Source: Tubulanus polymorphus (taxonomy: Eukaryota; Animalia; Nemertea). Taken from it: 64,000 nucleotides of DNA. The stretch is from NCBI RefSeq assembly GCF_964204645.1, contig NC_134032.1, positions 2,290,416 through 2,354,415 on the forward strand. The letters run 5' to 3'. Position numbers and translations under genes: made by a program. The notes beneath the pieces were generated by a model. The model was not told where the DNA came from and did no database searches. It saw only the letters and a program-made list of their open reading frames with translations. Each line of letters opens with the position of its first letter. The stretch's first letter is position 1. Positions 11,886 to 64,000 of this stretch are shown here, in pieces.

Positions 11886-12120
11886 TAAATGAAATACTGT
11901 TCAATGAAACATGTTCTAAAAATTTAATTCGACCAAATTACTTATTCTGGTATTATGCCCTTCTAATAATTTTGGCGTTTCAATTTTATTATCAATTTAA
12001 CGGTCTCTGGGAATTCTTTTTTGTTCTCGCTTAACGTAGTTCAGATCCTGTTCTCCCCAAGACCACCATATTTGTTTATCCATTTAACCTAACCGAAATA
12101 AAAAAAGAACAGTTTACTCA

Positions 12121-12443
12121 CCATCTGTCCAGATCGGGATCGGGGACGTGGTCGACTTTTCGTCTTTACGAAACAGTTGACAAACGGATGATTTCGCACC
12201 GCGACGCGTGAAGCTCATCGCACGGCAATCCGCTCGCAAGGTGCACGCTTCCGAACATCGTAACCGTGATTTCAAATTTGTAACGGTCGCCAAAACGGAC
12301 AATCTCGCACCAGTGCCCACCGTAGACCGGTTTAGCGACATCTGCCGCCGCTGCTGTTGCGGCAGTGCCCGGCATGGGTAACATATACAGCAGATCAGAG
12401 CGGTGAATATAAAACCTACTAGGCAGCCGTTAAAGGAACTCAT
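12121..12443 (-). CDS. secreted PAN/apple-domain protein, first coding exon
   Basis: Hydrophobic signal peptide (MSSFNGCLVGFIFTALICCICYPCRA), then SRLRCSEACTLRADCRAMSF...CQL (PAN C-x3-C-x5-C..F..C pattern); GTGAGT donor follows. Downstream exon uncertain (candidate acceptor ~11390). Confidence 0.65.
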
Positions 12444-13050
12444 TGCAGATATTAGACGGATTCTTTAGCTCTGACAATAACGGAGTTTTTTTACCGAGGC
12501 TTAGTTCATTAGGGAATAACGATTATGTAATGGTTATATTCGCTATGAAATCTGCAGCAATCAATTAACTTCCCAATTAATTATTCATAATCGCCGGTGT
12601 GCGAGACTCGATTCAGATGTAAAGTTTTCATTGAATAAAGCACTTTAATCTGTGTCAGGAATGTCCACATCTTCACTCAATTCGATATGCTCCAATCAAC
12701 TACTCTATGGTGAGTTTTCCGGTTTGCCCGACTGCCCGAACGATGGAGGTTAGTCTAGATAGGCCAATGTAAACTGCGGTTTGCTGAACTATATAACCCC
12801 TCTTTGCGGGGGGGGGGATGCGGTATGATGCTTATCACTTCATGTATTATGGTGTTTAATAAAAGATTTCATACATGATAAACCAAAACGCCATCGCGTG
12901 GGCTTCGTAGAAAGACCAGTGGCTTTTCCAAATTAATTTTCCTGTCCAATTTGGTTTCCTTTTCCAGTCAGGGACTTGCAATTTTGGCCCTCTTCGTCGG
13001 TTAGCTACAAATATTTCATTTCAGCTGTAGACCACAATGGTGACACCGTG

Positions 13051-13331
13051 CAGGGGCGGACCCAGAGGGCAAACTTGATTGCCTTCTTAGATTTAATAGG
13101 GCATATTATTGTAATCATAAGAGAAATTGTCTGCACTTGTATCAGCGAGCCACGCGGCGGCGACGCCCGAATTCCATCGGTAAACCACCACTTTGTTTTT
13201 GAAAGCATGCCAGAAGCAATCATTTTTTTCTCAGAGTTTAAAAAAAAATCATATACGTTGATAGTTGAAGGGCATTTAAAAATGTTGACTGCCTTCCGGA
13301 AGGCATGGAAGGCAACCTGGACCCGCCCCTG
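13051..13331. mobile_element. MITE with CAGGGGCGG TIRs and 5-bp TSD
   Basis: caggggcggaccc...ggacccgcccctg flanked by CCGTG/CCGTG. Confidence 0.85.
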
Positions 13332-15143
13332 CCGTGACGGTCAGAAACTGACCAATTGAGATATATGATCCCCGAGTCTGAACGTTTGACTTCGAATATC
13401 GGAAATTGTTCAAGTCATCGTTTGTTTTTAAACTACTAAGGATTCATCATTGCAAATTCATAGACTGACCATCACTGACCACTACTGACCAATTCAAACT
13501 ACTCGTATATGTTACTTTGGGCGTGACGAAAATATGGACAATGTCGCCTAATTCGCGACTGGCCTACTGACCTAATAAAGACGTTTCCAGTGTCTAGGCA
13601 CCATTTTGTGGCGGTCCCGCGAGGTCCCCATTGTTGCGATAATTTGCGCTCATTTTTCAAACATAAGTTTAGATTGAATATCACATAGTTCTGCAGTCCC
13701 TTGCTTGATTAACTTAATTCATTTTAAAGGAAATGAAATGCAGATATTTGCCGGTGATTCTTGGATTTTTTAAATGCAACAATTAAGAGCAGTGACGATG
13801 TGAAACCAAGGACCAAGATATTTCAACTGCGCGTCAAAAAATTGCGATTATTATTGATTTTAAAATATCTAAGTGGTTATTAAAGCTAGATTTCCCATTT
13901 TTACTGAGGTTAAAGAACGTTATTCGCTTTAAGGGCCTGCGTTGACATTTTGTGAATATCTTTCTTGACGACTGATCTCTAACCGCTAGAGTTTGAGATT
14001 ACGCGCCAAAGGGGTCTCCCACTGCGCACCGCCATTTCACTGAACATTGAGAGATTTGCGAAAAGCATGGGCGTGTGTCCGATAGCGATACAGCTGACAC
14101 TCAGATTCTCTCTGCGCATTTGTTATACTGACTAAACAATCTAACGAATGAAACATGTTATTTAAAAAACATTACCATCATAAGGCTATATGTTAGGCTA
14201 TATTGATATTGATTTATATAAGTGTTTCATTCTCTGTGATGCATCCTTAACCACAAGTTCCATTAACCGCTTCAAATAACGGATACATTTTTAAAACATG
14301 TACAAGGTATGGAATGATCTAAATCTATTTTGGAATAAATGAAATATGTGACTAAATTTCAATAATTTTCTATAATTTCCTATTCCTTATATACATCTGA
14401 AATATAATAGGATTTCCATTCAGTTGCCATGGTAGTCAGTAACCTGTCTGTGGTTTAGTTTCACGATCGGATATTGGTTGGTATAAGCCCATCCGTTTAT
14501 AAAAAGCTTACCACCAACGATTAGGTAACATAACTTTGCCAAGGAAACGTAAAAATTGGATCCCGATGGAGGCCCGGCTCCCGGCTTCTAAAATTGATAG
14601 TTAGGTTTGTATCAACATCTGGGCCAATTTTCGTGAATTTTTCCACCCGGTAACAATTCAAAAACAAACGCTAAGCCATCCTACTAGCGGTACCACCGAG
14701 AGGATCGACCCGCGATACTTTGGAGAGTTACCGGCGATCCCCGAACCTGGACGGAGCGCTCCTGATGTCGAACGTTTGTGAAGCTATCGTTTGGTGGCGC
14801 CCTCTCTTGTGAAGCGCCATCTTGAGTCTGTGTCGAATTAAAACCGGCTCGTCAAACCCGATCAAACACACTCAACGGCAGCCGCTCTACGATCCAGTAC
14901 TCGCCCTTGTGCAGCGGTGACACTGACGGTATTTTATCGCCAATTTTAGGAATCAGTTAATCGCAGTGAATACAACTGAGTGAACTATTTGTTAGCAGTT
15001 TAATCGTGAATCCGAAGAAGATCATTTTATAACGGAGGAGATTTCACCTCGCTCGTCGGTGAGTGAGGAGAGGAGATCACATCAATCAGTCATCAGTTAT
15101 TTGTTGGTTTGTTTTAAACTTGTGTTGGGGTTAAACTCGTAAC

Positions 15144-16341
15144 ATGGAAGCGAAAATCGATTCATTGACGCTCATTAAACGGGTAGATACAGACTTCATA
15201 CCCCACCTGGTGACGTCACTACCCGGTGAACACGAGGGTGAACAGTCACGTGTTATATGTGCGAGCTGGTGCTCCACTGATTATATATATAGTGTGAATG
15301 ATGATAATATACAGAGATACATAGAGATTGATGGTTTGATACAAGGACTCGATACTGATAGTAACGGGTTTCTGTTTGTGGTCGTGGAGAAAAACAGTGA
15401 ATACATCCTGAGAAAATATAAAAATAAGAGAAAACTCCTCGAAGAAAATATCACTGATCTCCTGCCTGGAGACTGTGGATCCTTAGTAATCCGTGATCAC
15501 AATATCTTTACACAGACAGGAGATAGTGATAGTGACATTCATGTTTTACCTTTACGAGAAAACCCTGTAGACAGATTGATTGATAGAACCCGAGTGAAGG
15601 AGCATCAGCTCCCGGATGGAGTTTACAAATGTATCAACAGTTTCGATGTCGACACGCGGGGACGTATATTTATCTACTGTATTCATGAACACAGCTTATT
15701 GTATCTAACACAAGAAGCAAAACTAACACAAGAAGCAAAACGGATGCGTTTTATTACTATGCACGATTGCGGACTGACATTTGATCCAATTGCAGGATTC
15801 CCGTGTGTTATTAATGATGATCATATATTACTATCGGTATACTCTAATACTGGTGACAGAGGATCTGTTATTAGTATCAGATATAATGATGTGGGGTTTA
15901 TAGATCACCGTATAATACTGAACTCTGACAGTTGGACATATCAGATACATCACGTGTGTAACAGTAACACTGTAGTTATCAATCACTGGGATCACAGTAA
16001 TAAACAGTTCTCACTGAGATTCTACAATATAGACACTGTGGAACCAGCTCCAGATGTCAGAGGGAATGTGTGTGGAATGAAAGTTGTAAACACTGTGGAA
16101 CCAGCTCCAGATGTCAGAGGGAATGTGTGTGAATCGGGTGGAATAGATCAATACTATATGAATCATGAACGCCGAGGCCTCGCTCTTGTTATATCAAATA
16201 AGGTATTTGACACCAGCAAAAATCGGATTGGCACAGAGTTTGATGTGGAGTCTTTACGCGAGGTGTTTAGTGATTTAGGCTTCGAAGTTGTCGTCCATGA
16301 GAATTTGACTGCGGAGGAAATGAAATCGAAAATGCGTGAAG
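15144..16341 (+). CDS. caspase exon 1 (propeller-like prodomain + start of p20)
   Basis: Track ORF 15144-16394; exon ends at GAAG|GCAAGT (phase 1). Confidence 0.88.
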
Positions 16342-19300
16342 GCAAGTATAAGAAAGAGTTTTATTATTTCAACTTTCAGCGAGTCCACAATTAGGCTAGA
16401 TCAGTAGCTAGTAGGTCAGACGCGTAGAGTCGGACCCCGGTCAAAAATGGTTCCTAGAATGAACGAGAGGTTTCCAATTGGACCCATCAGTTTGTCAACA
16501 TGAATTGGGGTTTGGCTAATACACAGCACTGCGGTGTATTAGTCCACCTGTATCCACCCTGACTATTACTCCTCAATCCACCTGTATCCACCCTGACTAT
16601 TACTCCTCAAGCTACCCGTATCCACCCTGACTATTACTCCTCAAGCTACCCGTATCCACCCTGACTATTACTCCTCAATCCACCTGTATCCACCCTGACT
16701 ATTACTCCTCAATCCACCTGTATCCACCCTGACTATTACTCCTCAATCCACCTGTATCCACCCTGACTATTACTCCTCAATCCACCTGTATCCACCCTGA
16801 CTTTTGCTCCTCAAGCTACCCGTATCCACCCTGACTATTTTTCCTCAATCCACCGGTATCCACCCTGACTATTACTCCTCAATCCACCTGTATCCACCCT
16901 GTCTATTACTCCTCAATCCACCTGTATCCACCCTGACTATTACTCCTCAATCCACCTGTATCCACCCTATTACTCCTCAATCCACCGGTATCCACCCTGA
17001 CTATTACTCCTCAATCCACCTGTATCCACCCTGTCTATTACTCCTCAATCCACCTGTATCCACCCTGACTATTACTCCTCAATCCACCTGTATCCACCCT
17101 ATTACTCCTCGATCCACCTGTATCCACCCTGACAATTACTTGACGAGAAATAGACAGTGTGGATAAAGTGGACCGTGGTATTCTTGGATCGCTCGTTCAA
17201 AGGATATACCGTATCGTGACCTGTTCACATTATAATTCTAATGCCAAATTTCAATTAACTGATTTAAACACTGTGCAATTTTTCAGCTGCCGCAGATCAT
17301 ATACATCGTGAATCAGATGCCTTTGTTTGTGCGATACTTAGTCACGGAGAAAAGGGTGACAAGGTTATGGGAAAAGATTGTAACACTGTTCGTGTTGAGG
17401 AACTTATCGAACCATTCAAAGGCAATGCGTGTGAAGCTTTAGCCGGAAAACCAAAACTATTCTTTATTCAGGTAAACAATATTCAGGAAGTTACGATGGC
17501 TCGCTACGATTCCTTGTGTCCTCGATAACTCCAAAAATGAATTTCAGCTAACAATCCCAAAAATCCTTGAAAATTCCTTGAATGTTAAGAAGTTGGCAAT
17601 TAGAAAACTTTTAGCCCACTAAAAATTTAGTCACTTGACCAGGACACCTCGCTGCAACTTGCAATTTACGTGACACAATAGTCTCATTGATACCACTGCC
17701 ACCTAACATAATGCTATCTCTATCTAAGGTTGTTTCGTGGAAAGGTCAATAAATACGAACTAATTGTGTCTAACAGGTTGTGTGGGGAATATCATATCTT
17801 ACTAAGTCTCCACTGTCCCCTTGCGTATGTGATACCTAAACTATTCAAGAGCACCATACTTTGATTTTTGGTAATATTTTGATTGACAGGCTTGTCGGGG
17901 TGATGGAACAGATGGAGGTGTAGTCGCTGATTCTATGACAATAGATGCTAATGAAGGTTTGAGAATTCCGAATGAAGCTGATGTCCTGATCGCCTACGCA
18001 ACCATTCCAGGTAAGAATTATGCACCTGCTTCAGATTGGTGAAAAACCTACTAAATCCGTGTGTTTTTAAATTCTTAGGCGAGGATTTTAAACTATATTG
18101 CGTTCACTTTTGATCCATCCGATTGTTTGACGCATGCGGAATCCAGTTATTTTCGTTTATTTAGAAGACACTTCAATGCATTGTCTTGATATTCCTAGAC
18201 ACATCTTCAGCCCCAAAACTGGCCCGATTAGAATCAAGATGGCCGTTTGACAGCCATTGTTGTTCGCTAAAATCAGCGCTTTTTACACTTTTGATATTTT
18301 GAAGATGCTTCAATCAATTATTCTAACTATGTTTTTTAGTGTTGCATGCGTGCTTAGTGGCATTCCGTATTTTAGTCTAAAATCGTTATTTGGTGAACAA
18401 ATGCCTAATCCTTTTTTTTCCGGGTGTGACGGAACGAGGATACCTGAAGGGACGTACTGATTCTTGATCGCCTTTAGTATATTTCCGCCGGTGTTGTCTG
18501 ACATTTAATAATTTTAGGTTTAGAATATAATGATGTACGGTACATACAAATAATCTGCATATTCAGATGGACCTTTTTATCCAATCAGAATTCAACATTT
18601 CATTTGGAAGCTAATAGAATTTGATGAATTCTTTGTAAAATGAAGCAGAAAATATATATAACAATCATAATCAACATTATAACCATAACAATCTACGGAA
18701 TTACAATAGGGTTTTCTGCCGTCAGCTGGTTTACGTGTGTAACTTAGAAAAATACTGGAAAGATTTCTGGAAATATTACAGCTAGGTGCTGGCAACACTG
18801 CTCCCTCCATGTATTATAGAAATGGTTTGAGTGGGAAATCCCTATCCTTTTCCTAGTGTTTGAGGCTAGCGCAGGAATTTTGGAAGTTGGCAGCTGAGCT
18901 CATTTCAATTTCATTACAACTCCACTGCGACAAGCTAGTTCAGTAGACTTCGCTAAGTCGAATGTTTTGGGAATGCCTGCTTTGAGTGATACCTGAGTCG
19001 GGTGTTATGTATTTCTTGTAAAAGTATCACAAAAAATATTATAAAAAAATGAAAACATTCGAGTTAAACGGTGTAACGATTTCATGCCCGGCAATCAACA
19101 ATTGGACGATTATCATGGATTGTATCAGAGCTCTTTATTCAACATGACTGTACGCAATGGCTGCAATACCGGAAGAGGCTGCAGTACTCGAGAACCACGA
19201 GTTTTTGATAACCACGGGGACCGTATCCTAATACATAATAGAACATGTTACTCATAATATTTCAAACGGTTACAGAGTTGATCAGATTCGATTTTGATTG

Positions 19301-19713
19301 AGTCTACTGTACATAGTCAATATTTTTATCAAAACTCTTTGGGGTCTACTTTTGCTTTTTCCACATTGTCAGATGCAAAGACTAAAAACCATTAACATCA
19401 TTTTCATTAGGAAGATCTATAAATAGGTTTATATATACCCTCACGGCCCCTACTTCTTTGTTAAGCACAATTTTTCGTTTTTTCCACAGGTTACGTTGCA
19501 TGGAGGAAGGAAGAGGAAGGATCATGTTATATACAAACCCTGTGTGAAGTTTTGAAGGAACCTTCTCGTTCGTTGGACCTGGTAAAAATGTTGACACTAG
19601 TCGGGGATAAAGTCGCGAAAAAAGTCACCAAAAAAAAAAATGAGGAATCCAAACAAATGCCGTGTTATTTCAGCTCATTAAGGAAAGATTTGTATTTTTC
19701 TCGTAAATCATAA
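15144..19713 (+). CDS. caspase (peptidase C14A) with long N-terminal beta-propeller-like prodomain, 4 coding exons, ~575 aa
   Basis: Exons 15144-16341, 17287-17471, 17890-18010 and 19490-19713 splice in frame: YYMNHERRGLALVISN..NRIGTEFD..LGFEV / DAFVCAILSHG..LAGKPKLFFIQ / ACRG..RIPNEADVLIAYATIP / GYVAWR..GSCYIQ..KQMPCYFSSLRKDLYF*. In-frame stop 12 nt upstream of the ATG. Confidence 0.93.
16543..17140 (+). repeat. 34-bp minisatellite in caspase intron 1
   Basis: Unit tccacctgtatccaccctgactattactcctcaa, ~17 copies. Confidence 0.95.
17287..17471 (+). CDS. caspase exon 2 (catalytic His, SHG)
   Basis: tttcag| ... ILSHG ... KPKLFFIQ |gtaaac. Confidence 0.93.
17890..18010 (+). CDS. caspase exon 3 (catalytic Cys, Q|ACRG, intersubunit linker)
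   Basis: gacag| ACRGDGTDGGVVADSMTIDANEGLRIPNEADVLIAYATIP |gtaaga. Confidence 0.93.
19490..19713 (+). CDS. caspase exon 4 (p10 subunit)
   Basis: cacag| YVAWRKEEEGSCYIQTLC...KQMPCYFSSLRKDLYFSRKS*; AATAAA at ~19763. Confidence 0.92.
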
Positions 19714-34306: not shown

Positions 34307-45270
<10,964 letters not shown>

Positions 45271-62165: not shown

Positions 62166-64000
62166 TTAACGTAAGCGTTTAGTTTTTGCTCGTATGGATT
62201 TCATATCGATAGTCAGTATTGTGTAAAGTAGGGGATTGAGGGACGAGTTGATCGGTAGGAAAAGAACCGCCAGCCAAGCCGCCACCTGATTCGGTATTTC
62301 TACCCGTAATACCGCGCAAAACTGAACGATAATTAACGGCATCCAGCAAAATAAATTACAAAGATTTATCACCAAACTTCTACGTGCTAAAATCAGTTCG
62401 GTAGGGTCAATTCTACCCGATCCAGACCTGCTTCCAGAGACGAGTCTGTACATTTGCGCATAAGTCGTCATTATCGTAGCGAGTATGAAGGTGTTGAATA
62501 CGGCAAAAATTGCGAAGGAATATTGCCAGGCGTTGACGTCAATTGATATTAAATTCATAGGTAAACAAACTCCAGTTTTTCCGTAGAATTTAATACCGAA
62601 ATAAGATAATTCTGACAACGGCAATATGGAGATTGTACTTATAGTAACCCAACACACGCCACAAATAATGGACACGTATCTCGGTGATGTAATCGGGCTT
62701 CCAGAAAATGGATTAACGATATTTGAAAATCTATGACGTGTTAGAAAGAATAGAAACGTCAACGAGCCTTCGCAAGAAATAGTGACCGTAACTCCAGCGA
62801 AACTGCACAATGAACTGTCCGTCCAAGTTTCAGAATTCAGGAAATAAACTCCTTTAAAAACGTAATCCGCGCCCGCGATCGAAAACAAATAAATCGACAT
62901 GAGAAAATCACAAGCTGCGATATTAATAATTAGGATGTCGGAAGATGTGTTGCGCTTTTCGGAGGATGAAAGTCGAATTGATCGAAGACGAAATAAAATG
63001 ACAATTGTGTTCGCGAAGAAACTGAACGCGGCGATGACCCAGATGATAGCTCTGAGGACTGTGTTACCCATCAGATCAGAACAAGAGGAAAACTGATCAG
63101 CTTTAGGAAGGCACCGGTCGACATTCGGAGCCATGCAGCAAAATTTGTAAGCGTCAGACGATAGAGATACTAGCGATGTCAGATTGATGAAAACTTCTCT
63201 TTCTGTGGAAATGAATTGAGAATTGTTGGTTAAATCGAGAATTCTAAGTTTATTTAATCCTGAAAAAGCATATCGTGAAATATGATGGATTCTGTTGCTG
63301 CTGATATTCAACGACTGTAATGTAGATAATCCTCTAAACACATTTCTACCAAGCAGCAATAGCGAAAGCCCTTGAAGGTTCAGAATTTGTAATGACATTA
63401 AATCTCGAAAGGTATTGTCGTCTAAATGGCGTAGTGGATTTGCAGTTATCAATAACTCTTTTAAATTATACAAACCGATGAATGTGTTTGTGGATAATGA
63501 CGTTATGTTGTTGTATGTAAGATCTAATGTATGTAAATTATGCAGGTTTGTGAACGAGTTCGGTAAAATATGAGACAATTCGTTGGAAGAGATGTTGAGC
63601 ATTCGAAGATAAACGAATGAAGAAAACGTCGATTCATTGAATCGAAATTCGTTTTTTGACAGAATTAAAACTCGAGTTGATTCCGAGAAAAGACCAGTAA
63701 TATTTGTTAAACCGGCATTCGCGCAATCAATCAAATGACCTTGGCATCTACAGCCCATCTGACACGTGACGTTACAGAAAGCCTCGTCATCAATTGTGAA
63801 TTTACAATTTACGACACCATCACAAACTTCAGATTGTGGAATACATCGATTTTCGTGGCCACATTTAAACATTCCTGGACACGAAAATGTCTCACAGTTT
63901 TGTTCATCTTCTGAATTAGGACAATCTGATTGACCATCACACACCTGTCTGATCGGTATACAGTACGATGCTGGACATTTTACAGTATCAGCTGGGCATT
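62166..64000 (-). CDS. GRL101-like LDLa-LRR GPCR (LGR/RXFP family), 5'-partial
   Basis: Frame open to the window edge (CPADTVKCPASYCIPIRQVCDGQSDC); at least 2 LDLa repeats, LRRNT + LRRs, hinge YKFCC..FSSCSDL, 7 TM with CLP in ECL2, CWMP, LPINSSLNPLLYT. Confidence 0.93.
   Translation of the reverse strand, partial: CPADTVKCPASYCIPIRQVCDGQSDCPNSEDEQNCETFSCPGMFKCGHENRCIPQSEVCDGVVNCKFTIDDEAFCNVTCQMGCRCQGHLIDCANAGLTNITGLFSESTRVLILSKNEFRFNESTFSSFVYLRMLNISSNELSHILPNSFTNLHNLHTLDLTYNNITSLSTNTFIGLYNLKELLITANPLRHLDDNTFRDLMSLQILNLQGLSLLLLGRNVFRGLSTLQSLNISSNRIHHISRYAFSGLNKLRILDLTNNSQFISTEREVFINLTSLVSLSSDAYKFCCMAPNVDRCLPKADQFSSCSDLMGNTVLRAIIWVIAAFSFFANTIVILFRLRSIRLSSSEKRNTSSDILIINIAACDFLMSIYLFSIAGADYVFKGVYFLNSETWTDSSLCSFAGVTVTISCEGSLTFLFFLTRHRFSNIVNPFSGSPITSPRYVSIICGVCWVTISTISILPLSELSYFGIKFYGKTGVCLPMNLISIDVNAWQYSFAIFAVFNTFILATIMTTYAQMYRLVSGSRSGSGRIDPTELILARRSLVINLCNLFCWMPLIIVQFCAVLRVEIPNQVAAWLAVLFLPINSSLNPLLYTILTIDMKSIRAKTKRLR

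What the first reader, a model, noticed from the sequence alone, without database searches (positions are those of the whole stretch)
15144..19713. Caspase with a beta-propeller (NHL-like) prodomain instead of CARD/DED: candidate sensor-protease
Seen: an intact spliced caspase with all catalytic and S1 residues (R in NRIGT, SHG, QACRG, WR). The first ~295 aa, all in one large exon, consist of repeated beta-strand blocks (GLDTDSNGFLFVV, SLVIRDHNIFTQ, SFDVDTRGRIFIYC, CVINDDHILLSV, HHVCNSNTVVIN) like the NHL/6-bladed propellers at the C-terminus of invertebrate TRIM-NHL proteins; they do not look like helical death-fold domains. Established: initiator caspases normally use CARD/DED, and beta-propellers serve as ligand sensors in Apaf-1 and in fungal/bacterial immune proteins. 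Inference: a one-component ligand-sensing or self-oligomerising caspase made by exon shuffling or retro-capture. I do not recognise this architecture from described caspases.
Basis: partly seen in the sequence, partly recalled or inferred. Interest (0 to 1): 0.85.

Follow-up and report, generated by a model that had tools for sequence, protein, structure and literature searches.

The report
Caspase carrying a hypervariable beta-propeller
A ribbon worm has fused a fast-changing, propeller-shaped binding domain, shared with a large family of receptor-like genes, to an executioner-type cell-death protease, which may let one protein both recognise a target and start cell death; this function has not been tested.

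Summary
The gene has four exons (15144-19713, 575 aa, a GC-AG first intron). It joins a ~295-aa six-bladed beta-propeller to a caspase with R361, H419, Q461, C463 and R507 intact. A 61%-identical paralogue's propeller folds confidently and best matches TRIM-NHL domains (Z 23.9), though Pfam NHL is not met. The genome is Tubulanus polymorphus (a nemertean). The propeller is the terminal module of a lineage-specific family of more than 40 copies (unknown N-domain, coiled coil, propeller). About seven caspase fusions exist. Six examined share the junction and GC donor, yet their propellers are not one clade (p-AU 1e-5) and look like gene-conversion mosaics. Changes concentrate on the top face (dN/dS 3.4 against about 1.2 elsewhere). 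Best reading: an innate-immune sensor-protease activated by clustering (about 50%). Against: at least four fusions are broken, the caspase domain shows pN/pS near 1, this copy has altered S4 and dimer-interface residues, and transcription was not shown. The scan noted the same architecture at paralogous loci before.

The parts
15144..16341 (+). Exon 1 (aa 1-399): propeller, linker and first 63 residues of the caspase large subunit, in one reading frame
   Evidence: same layout in 5 paralogous fusions
15155..16039 (+). Six-bladed beta-propeller module (aa ~5-299; 24 strands, the first strand closes blade 6); hypervariable top face; no signal peptide or membrane segment. DNA homology to the non-caspase family spans exactly this stretch
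15705..15741 (+). 18-bp in-frame tandem duplication private to this copy, in blade 4 (strand c-d region)
16030..16151 (+). Propeller-caspase linker. Here it carries a ~45-bp duplication at 57-bp spacing, giving two PAPD motifs (D304, D323) and GGID335: candidate sites for release of the propeller (inference)
16152..16341 (+). Caspase large subunit, first part, with S1 arginine R361
16342..17286 (+). Intron 1, GC-AG, holding a 34-bp tandem repeat (16543-17140); GC donor conserved in all fusions checked
17287..17471 (+). Exon 2: catalytic His419 (17343) and Q461
17890..18010 (+). Exon 3: catalytic Cys463 (17893) and intersubunit linker with VVAD475-S, at the place of caspase-3 IETD-S (position from general knowledge)
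19490..19713 (+). Exon 4: small subunit with W506-R507. Cys514 replaces the conserved S4 Trp. The dimer-interface strand reads CYFSS (560-564) where caspase-7 has CVVSM and the twin gene has CVVTT

Best explanation
A cytosolic sensor-protease of the worm's innate defence. SHOWN: an executioner-clade caspase with intact catalytic and S1 residues carries, in place of a short prodomain, the propeller module of a lineage-specific family. That module's top face is changing faster than the rest, also within the caspase-fused copies. The fused propellers share sequence tracts with the neighbouring non-caspase array. INFERRED: the top face binds a variable foreign ligand, more likely protein or glycan than RNA. 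Executioner zymogens are dimers (established), so each dimer would show two propellers. A multivalent ligand, or the coiled-coil relatives bound to the same ligand, would cluster zymogens and allow cleavage at the intersubunit Asp475 and perhaps at the linker Asp sites, bypassing an initiator caspase and ending in cell death or signalling. Gene conversion from the array would keep supplying new specificities.
For: Fold: pLDDT 86-98 over the paralogue's propeller; best matches are the NHL domains of Mei-P26 (Z 23.9, rmsd 3.1, 255 aligned), Brat (23.4) and NHL-2 (23.0), and Brat is first in Foldseek. Variation: 19 of the 25 most variable sites are top-face; entropy 1.45 against 0.90 on the bottom face, p 2.8e-5. 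In the five caspase-fused C8 copies dN/dS is 3.4 on the top face, 1.3 on the bottom and 1.2 elsewhere; per-site test p 0.003. Window versus twin: introns differ at 6 of 2241 sites, the propeller at 41 of 870, 37 of them non-synonymous. Exchange: at 36 of these 41 sites both alleles occur in other paralogues; fused propellers are rejected as one clade, p-AU 1e-5, although junction, GC donor and exon structure are shared. No signal peptide or membrane helix. Precedents for direct sensor-caspase fusions: PMC2575513, PMC7836458.
Against: No ligand, expression or activity data; the reads were uninformative. Of about seven fusions, at least four are damaged: a deleted catalytic-His exon segment, missing exons 2-4 within the 7 kb held, a broken propeller frame and a rewritten catalytic loop. 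A fifth has SHV for SHG. The caspase domain shows pN/pS 0.8-1.1 between paralogues, which is weak constraint for a conserved protease. Top-face variation could be imported by conversion from the selected array without selection on the fusion itself. Executioner caspases do not normally self-activate (PMC2805924). This copy has Cys for the S4 Trp and Phe at the caspase-3 V266 position, where substitutions can activate (V266E, PMC2805924) or abolish activity (V266H, PMC3392103). Face assignment came from secondary structure, not from coordinates.
Confidence: 0.5

Rival explanations
1. Address label or substrate receptor: the propeller carries the caspase to a variable target (a microbial protein, or the array proteins themselves), while activation still comes from an ordinary initiator caspase. 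The output is then targeted cleavage rather than sensing.
For: Executioner-type domain with a conventional intersubunit Asp; substrate-contacting loops differ strongly among paralogues; executioner zymogens need cleavage (PMC2805924).
Against: Does not explain why catalytically dead fusions persist with intact propellers; no direct evidence.
Confidence: 0.2
2. Passenger: a chance fusion in a recombination-prone region that is duplicated and decays (birth and death). The propeller's variation is inherited by gene conversion from the selected array, and this copy's caspase may be weak or dead.
For: At least four of about seven fusions damaged; caspase pN/pS near 1; 36 of 41 propeller differences shared with other paralogues; changed S4 and interface residues.
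Against: The fusion is old enough for about 30% synonymous divergence between the C8 and C11 copies, yet frame, splice sites and start are kept. The top-face excess is stronger in the fused copies (3.4) than in the C8 array (1.55). RefSeq models of paralogues splice at the GC donor.
Confidence: 0.2
3. Bait or brake: the propeller holds the caspase inactive or mimics a host target, and a pathogen protease or binder removes or displaces it, releasing activity (guard or decoy logic).
For: Extended linker with a private duplication in this copy; fast change at one face also fits a bait evading or attracting an antagonist.
Against: Executioner zymogens are already inactive without a brake; the same face varies in array members that have no caspase.
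Confidence: 0.1

Closest known systems
Executioner caspases (caspase-3/6/7 clade; nearest outside Tubulanus among single-domain hits: Lineus longissimus caspase-3-like, 49%)
   Same: Peptidase_C14 domain, His-Cys dyad, S1 Arg/Gln/Arg, QACRG, intersubunit Asp
   Different: A 335-residue N-terminal region with a folded propeller instead of a short prodomain; S4 Trp and dimer-interface strand altered in this copy
NHL domains of TRIM-NHL proteins (Brat, Mei-P26, NHL-2, TRIM2, LIN-41/TRIM71)
   Same: Six-bladed propeller, top structural matches (Z 21-24); variation on the face that is the binding face in Brat (PMC4015489)
   Different: 9-12% identity, no Pfam NHL hit, no RING/B-box; top face acidic (4 K/R against 13 D/E by a rough face definition), not basic as in RNA-binding members; N-terminal and fused to a protease
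Predicted direct sensor-caspase fusions: amphioxus LRR-caspase and TNFR-caspase (PMC2575513); oyster DSRM-caspases Cg3C-like A/B (PMC7836458)
   Same: A putative recognition domain joined directly to a caspase, lineage-specific; the oyster cases are also executioner-group
   Different: Here the sensor is a beta-propeller, with measured diversification and exchange with a large non-caspase array; none of these cases is shown to be ligand-activated in the passages read
Lineage-specific expansions with a constant N-terminal effector or adaptor and a variable C-terminal propeller (Branchiostoma DED-TRADD-N-WD40; PMC8195603)
   Same: The donor family has the same layout: constant head, linker, variable propeller
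   Different: The head here is not Pfam TRADD-like_N and remains unidentified; the propeller is six-bladed NHL-like; no propeller-caspase fusion appears in the passages read

Membership tests
Caspases (Peptidase C14A) | Peptidase_C14 domain over its whole length | tested here: met
   four exons cover profile 1-233 in order
Caspases (Peptidase C14A) | His-Cys dyad and Asp-specific S1 residues (Arg, Gln, Arg) | tested here: met
   R361, H419, Q461, C463, R507
Caspases (Peptidase C14A) | Proteolysis after Asp | not testable with these tools
   needs an enzyme assay; S4 and interface changes make it uncertain
Executioner caspases (3/6/7) | Catalytic domain nearest caspase-3/6/7 | tested here: met
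   best hits in PDB and in the protein collection; by similarity ranking, no caspase tree built
Executioner caspases (3/6/7) | Short prodomain | tested here: not met
   about 335 residues precede the catalytic domain
Initiator/inflammatory caspases | CARD or DED prodomain | tested here: not met
   no Pfam death-fold hit; all-beta fold in the paralogue
NHL-type propellers | Six-bladed beta-propeller fold | tested here: met
   24 strands, Z 23.9 to Mei-P26 NHL; model of 61%-identical paralogue P0012
NHL-type propellers | NHL repeat sequence signature (PF01436) | tested here: not met
   no hit in 28 family members; the genome's PF01436 hits lie elsewhere; ESM features point to NHL clusters
TRIM-NHL proteins | RING, B-box and coiled coil before the NHL domain | tested here: not met
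   no RING/B-box in the fusion or in the donor family
TRIM-NHL proteins | Basic, RNA-binding top surface | tested here: inconclusive
   residue count suggests an acidic top face; no electrostatic calculation on coordinates was possible
Diversifying innate receptor systems | Multigene expansion with one-face diversification and sequence exchange | tested here: met
Diversifying innate receptor systems | Binding of a non-self ligand; induction or function in infection | not testable with these tools
   no ligand or expression data

The most novel reading that the evidence does not exclude
A one-component animal immune receptor in which an executioner caspase is switched on directly by a hypervariable beta-propeller, and whose specificity is renewed by gene conversion from a large array of non-caspase propeller genes; catalytically dead fusions act as partners or dampers. 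No adaptor, death fold or initiator caspase is needed.
Probability: 0.3. Interest if true: 0.85.

Novelty: new variant of a known kind. Interest (0 to 1): 0.66.

Why it matters
Animal caspases are normally linked to sensors through death-fold adaptors, and executioners need an initiator. A diversifying binding surface placed directly on an executioner caspase would be a short cut from recognition to proteolysis. It would give a testable case of how an invertebrate without adaptive immunity widens its recognition repertoire. The pair of near-identical genes (introns 99.7% alike, top faces about 9% different at non-synonymous sites) is a ready-made comparison for ligand specificity. It also shows that a Pfam-invisible propeller family hides behind 'uncharacterized protein' annotations. 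So far it is limited to one genome.

Tried and rejected
The spliced model was searched exon by exon, by reference; the joined protein was not built, searched or folded. Single-sequence AlphaFold of exon 1 was uninformative (pLDDT 34). My second and last fold job used paralogue P0012 with alignment A3, which I sent before seeing my own check. That check showed MAFFT had laid 14 N-domain-only rows onto the propeller columns. The propeller still folded confidently from 38 other rows, but the N-domain model is unsupported and I draw nothing from it. Pfam and PDB sequence/profile searches do not see the propeller. A profile search of 1.84 billion representatives gave 13 hits: 12 from T. polymorphus and one weak prokaryote-type repeat protein. 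The donor family's N-domain has no hit in Pfam, PDB, viral contigs or ESM Atlas, and only T. polymorphus hits in the protein collection; TRADD-like_N was tested and not met. Reads: the four runs offered are not on record as RNA and cover introns and flanks, so they show nothing on splicing. I laid only 12000-16540, leaving out the intron-1 tandem repeat because the tool turns away long repeats. Ten long-prodomain caspases from other animals showed no propeller Pfam, a weak test since this propeller is itself Pfam-blind. Literature searches found no paper holding caspase, NHL, prodomain and propeller together, and nothing on this family. Rejected: retro-capture (no intron loss needed), death-fold or disordered N-terminus, assembly artefact (about seven loci on two chromosomes).
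Full report
Observation. The gene lies on the + strand in four exons: 15144-16341, 17287-17471, 17890-18010 and 19490-19713. The phases are compatible and give 575 codons plus stop (trial coordinates corrected by one base). The four pieces match consecutive parts of Pfam Peptidase_C14. R361, H419, Q461, C463 and R507 are present. The first 299 residues have no Pfam or PDB sequence match and are in the same ORF as the start of the caspase. Intron 1 begins with GC; the same donor is found in all five paralogous fusions checked. RefSeq models of three of them continue into exon 2 at that point, which is indirect support for the splice. I searched exon by exon and left the joined protein out.

Organism and family. 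Close homologues are all Tubulanus polymorphus RefSeq proteins, and their contig lengths equal those of the window's assembly. The N-terminal domain has 94 matches in the genome, more than 40 of them near full length. Most belong to genes with an unidentified ~175-aa N-domain, a coiled coil of variable length and this domain at the C-terminus, where it lies inside the last exon. About seven loci have it at the N-terminus of a caspase: the window, C8:3.72, 2.27, 0.93, 3.08 and 3.23 Mb, and C11:13.88 Mb. DNA homology between the window and the non-caspase genes runs exactly over 15155-16039, so the domain moves as a unit. A profile search of 1.84 billion representatives found the family only in this species, apart from one weak repeat protein.

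Fold. ESM Atlas features place the window's domain with NHL clusters (0.93, 177 shared features), a modest signal taken alone. AlphaFold on paralogue P0012, 61% identical over the domain, gave pLDDT 86-98 and 24 strands, that is six blades closed by the first strand. The alignment behind this model was flawed for the N-domain, so only the propeller part is used. The best structural matches are the NHL domains of Mei-P26 (Z 23.9), Brat (23.4), NHL-2 (23.0) and TRIM2 (22.3) at 9-11% identity (Brat first in Foldseek). Other six-bladed propellers follow within 1-2 Z units, so descent from TRIM-NHL is likely but not shown. The Pfam NHL signature is not met.

The protease. The nearest solved and annotated relatives are caspase-3/6/7. 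It is therefore an executioner-type domain that gained a large N-terminal module, not an initiator that lost a CARD or DED. The intersubunit linker has VVAD475-S, and the propeller linker has PAPD twice (a private duplication) and GGID. This copy departs from its twin and from caspase-7 in exon 4: Cys514 for the conserved Trp of the S4 pocket, and CYFSS for CVVSM in the dimer-interface strand. The second change puts Phe at the place of caspase-3 Val266 (numbering from general knowledge), where Glu activates the zymogen (PMC2805924) and His abolishes activity (PMC3392103). Its effect here is unknown.

Diversification. I classed sites by blade geometry, with d-a and b-c loops as top and a-b and c-d loops as bottom, the convention used for Brat (PMC4015489). 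Across 32 propellers, 19 of the 25 most variable sites are top-face, and entropy is 1.45 against 0.90 (p 2.8e-5). Among the five caspase-fused copies on C8, dN/dS is 3.4 on the top face, 1.3 on the bottom and 1.2 elsewhere (pooled pairs, not independent); a per-site test gives p 0.003. The window gene and its twin at C8:3.72 Mb differ at 6 of 2241 intron sites but at 41 of 870 propeller sites, 37 of them non-synonymous. At 36 of these 41 sites both alleles occur in other paralogues, and the nearest relative changes along the domain. The six fused propellers examined are rejected as one clade (p-AU 1e-5), while the five on C8 are not (p 0.14). Yet the C8 and C11 fusions share the junction region (77% over 167 nt), the GC donor and the exon structure. 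The simplest reading is one fusion followed by repeated exchange of propeller sequence with the array; two fusions onto related caspases are less likely but not excluded. The top face of this copy is acidic by residue count, unlike RNA-binding TRIM-NHL domains.

State of the other fusions. C8:0.93 Mb lacks 73 bp that include the exon 2 acceptor and the catalytic His. C8:2.27 Mb has no exons 2-4 in the 7 kb held. C8:3.23 Mb has a broken propeller frame. C11 has a rewritten catalytic loop, and C8:3.08 Mb has SHV for SHG. Only this gene and its twin have the full canonical set. Caspase-domain pN/pS between paralogues is 0.8-1.1. This fits birth and death with specificity drift, and it also fits decay.

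Mechanism. Shown: the architecture, the fold (on a paralogue), catalytic residues, lack of a signal peptide or membrane helix, one-face diversification and sequence sharing with the array. Inferred: the top face binds a variable foreign ligand; zymogen dimers carry two propellers and are clustered by a multivalent ligand or together with the coiled-coil relatives; clustering allows cleavage at Asp475 without an initiator. I put this at 0.5. A targeting role with conventional activation gets 0.2, a decaying passenger 0.2, and a bait or brake 0.1. Transcription could not be tested: the runs offered are not on record as RNA and cover non-coding DNA.

Comparison and novelty. Direct fusions of a putative sensor to a caspase have been predicted before: LRR- and TNFR-caspases in amphioxus (PMC2575513) and DSRM-caspases in oyster (PMC7836458). 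Families with a constant head and a variable propeller are known from amphioxus and bivalves (PMC8195603). I found no paper on a propeller-caspase fusion or on this family, within an incomplete library. It is a caspase by membership, works like a direct sensor-caspase by inference, and is not a TRIM-NHL protein. I class it as a new variant of a known kind, interest 0.66. The scan's earlier notes record the same architecture at paralogous loci and the hypervariable array; I tested those points independently here.

Noticed in passing
G000 C8:0.21-0.76 Mb, C12:1.3-6.3 Mb, C6:22.2-22.6 Mb and others (L003-L036): Donor family: unidentified ~175-aa N-domain + cysteine-containing coiled-coil repeat of very variable length + hypervariable propeller; some genes have two propellers. 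The N-domain has no match anywhere outside this species and also occurs at loci with no propeller match (C2:6.63, C6:4.84 Mb).
   Followed up: partly
L022 (G000:C2:4.70 Mb; P0021, 1435 aa): Divergent member (about 30% identity) with a long low-complexity repeat and coiled coil before the propeller, and no match to the N-domain in the DNA held.
   Followed up: no
L029:2895-3974 (G000:C1:1.667 Mb): Very distant, intronless propeller-like ORF (28% identity, E 1e-4) lying between two near-identical rhodopsin-type GPCR-like ORFs.
   Followed up: no
L039 / RefSeq P0006: The RefSeq model reads through the GC donor and skips the catalytic His; the genome has a 73-bp deletion there, so the model is probably an artefact on a damaged gene. 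P0016 joins a truncated fusion to a CUB domain, possibly also a modelling artefact.
   Followed up: partly
G000:C11:13.871-13.875 Mb, C4:4.82 Mb, C8:0.644-0.647 Mb: Caspases with similar exon breaks and no propeller match at the start of the ORF; candidates for the unfused parent. The C11 one lies directly beside the C11 pseudo-caspase fusion.
   Followed up: no
window 62166-63998 (-): LDLa + leucine-rich repeats + 7TM in one long ORF: an RXFP/GRL101-type receptor fragment.
   Followed up: no
window 37244-37477: Near-perfect CAG run of 78 copies next to a 24-bp tandem array.
   Followed up: no
window 14433-14529 and 13520-13820: Very high-copy short interspersed repeats just upstream of the gene (depth and loose ends).
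   Followed up: no
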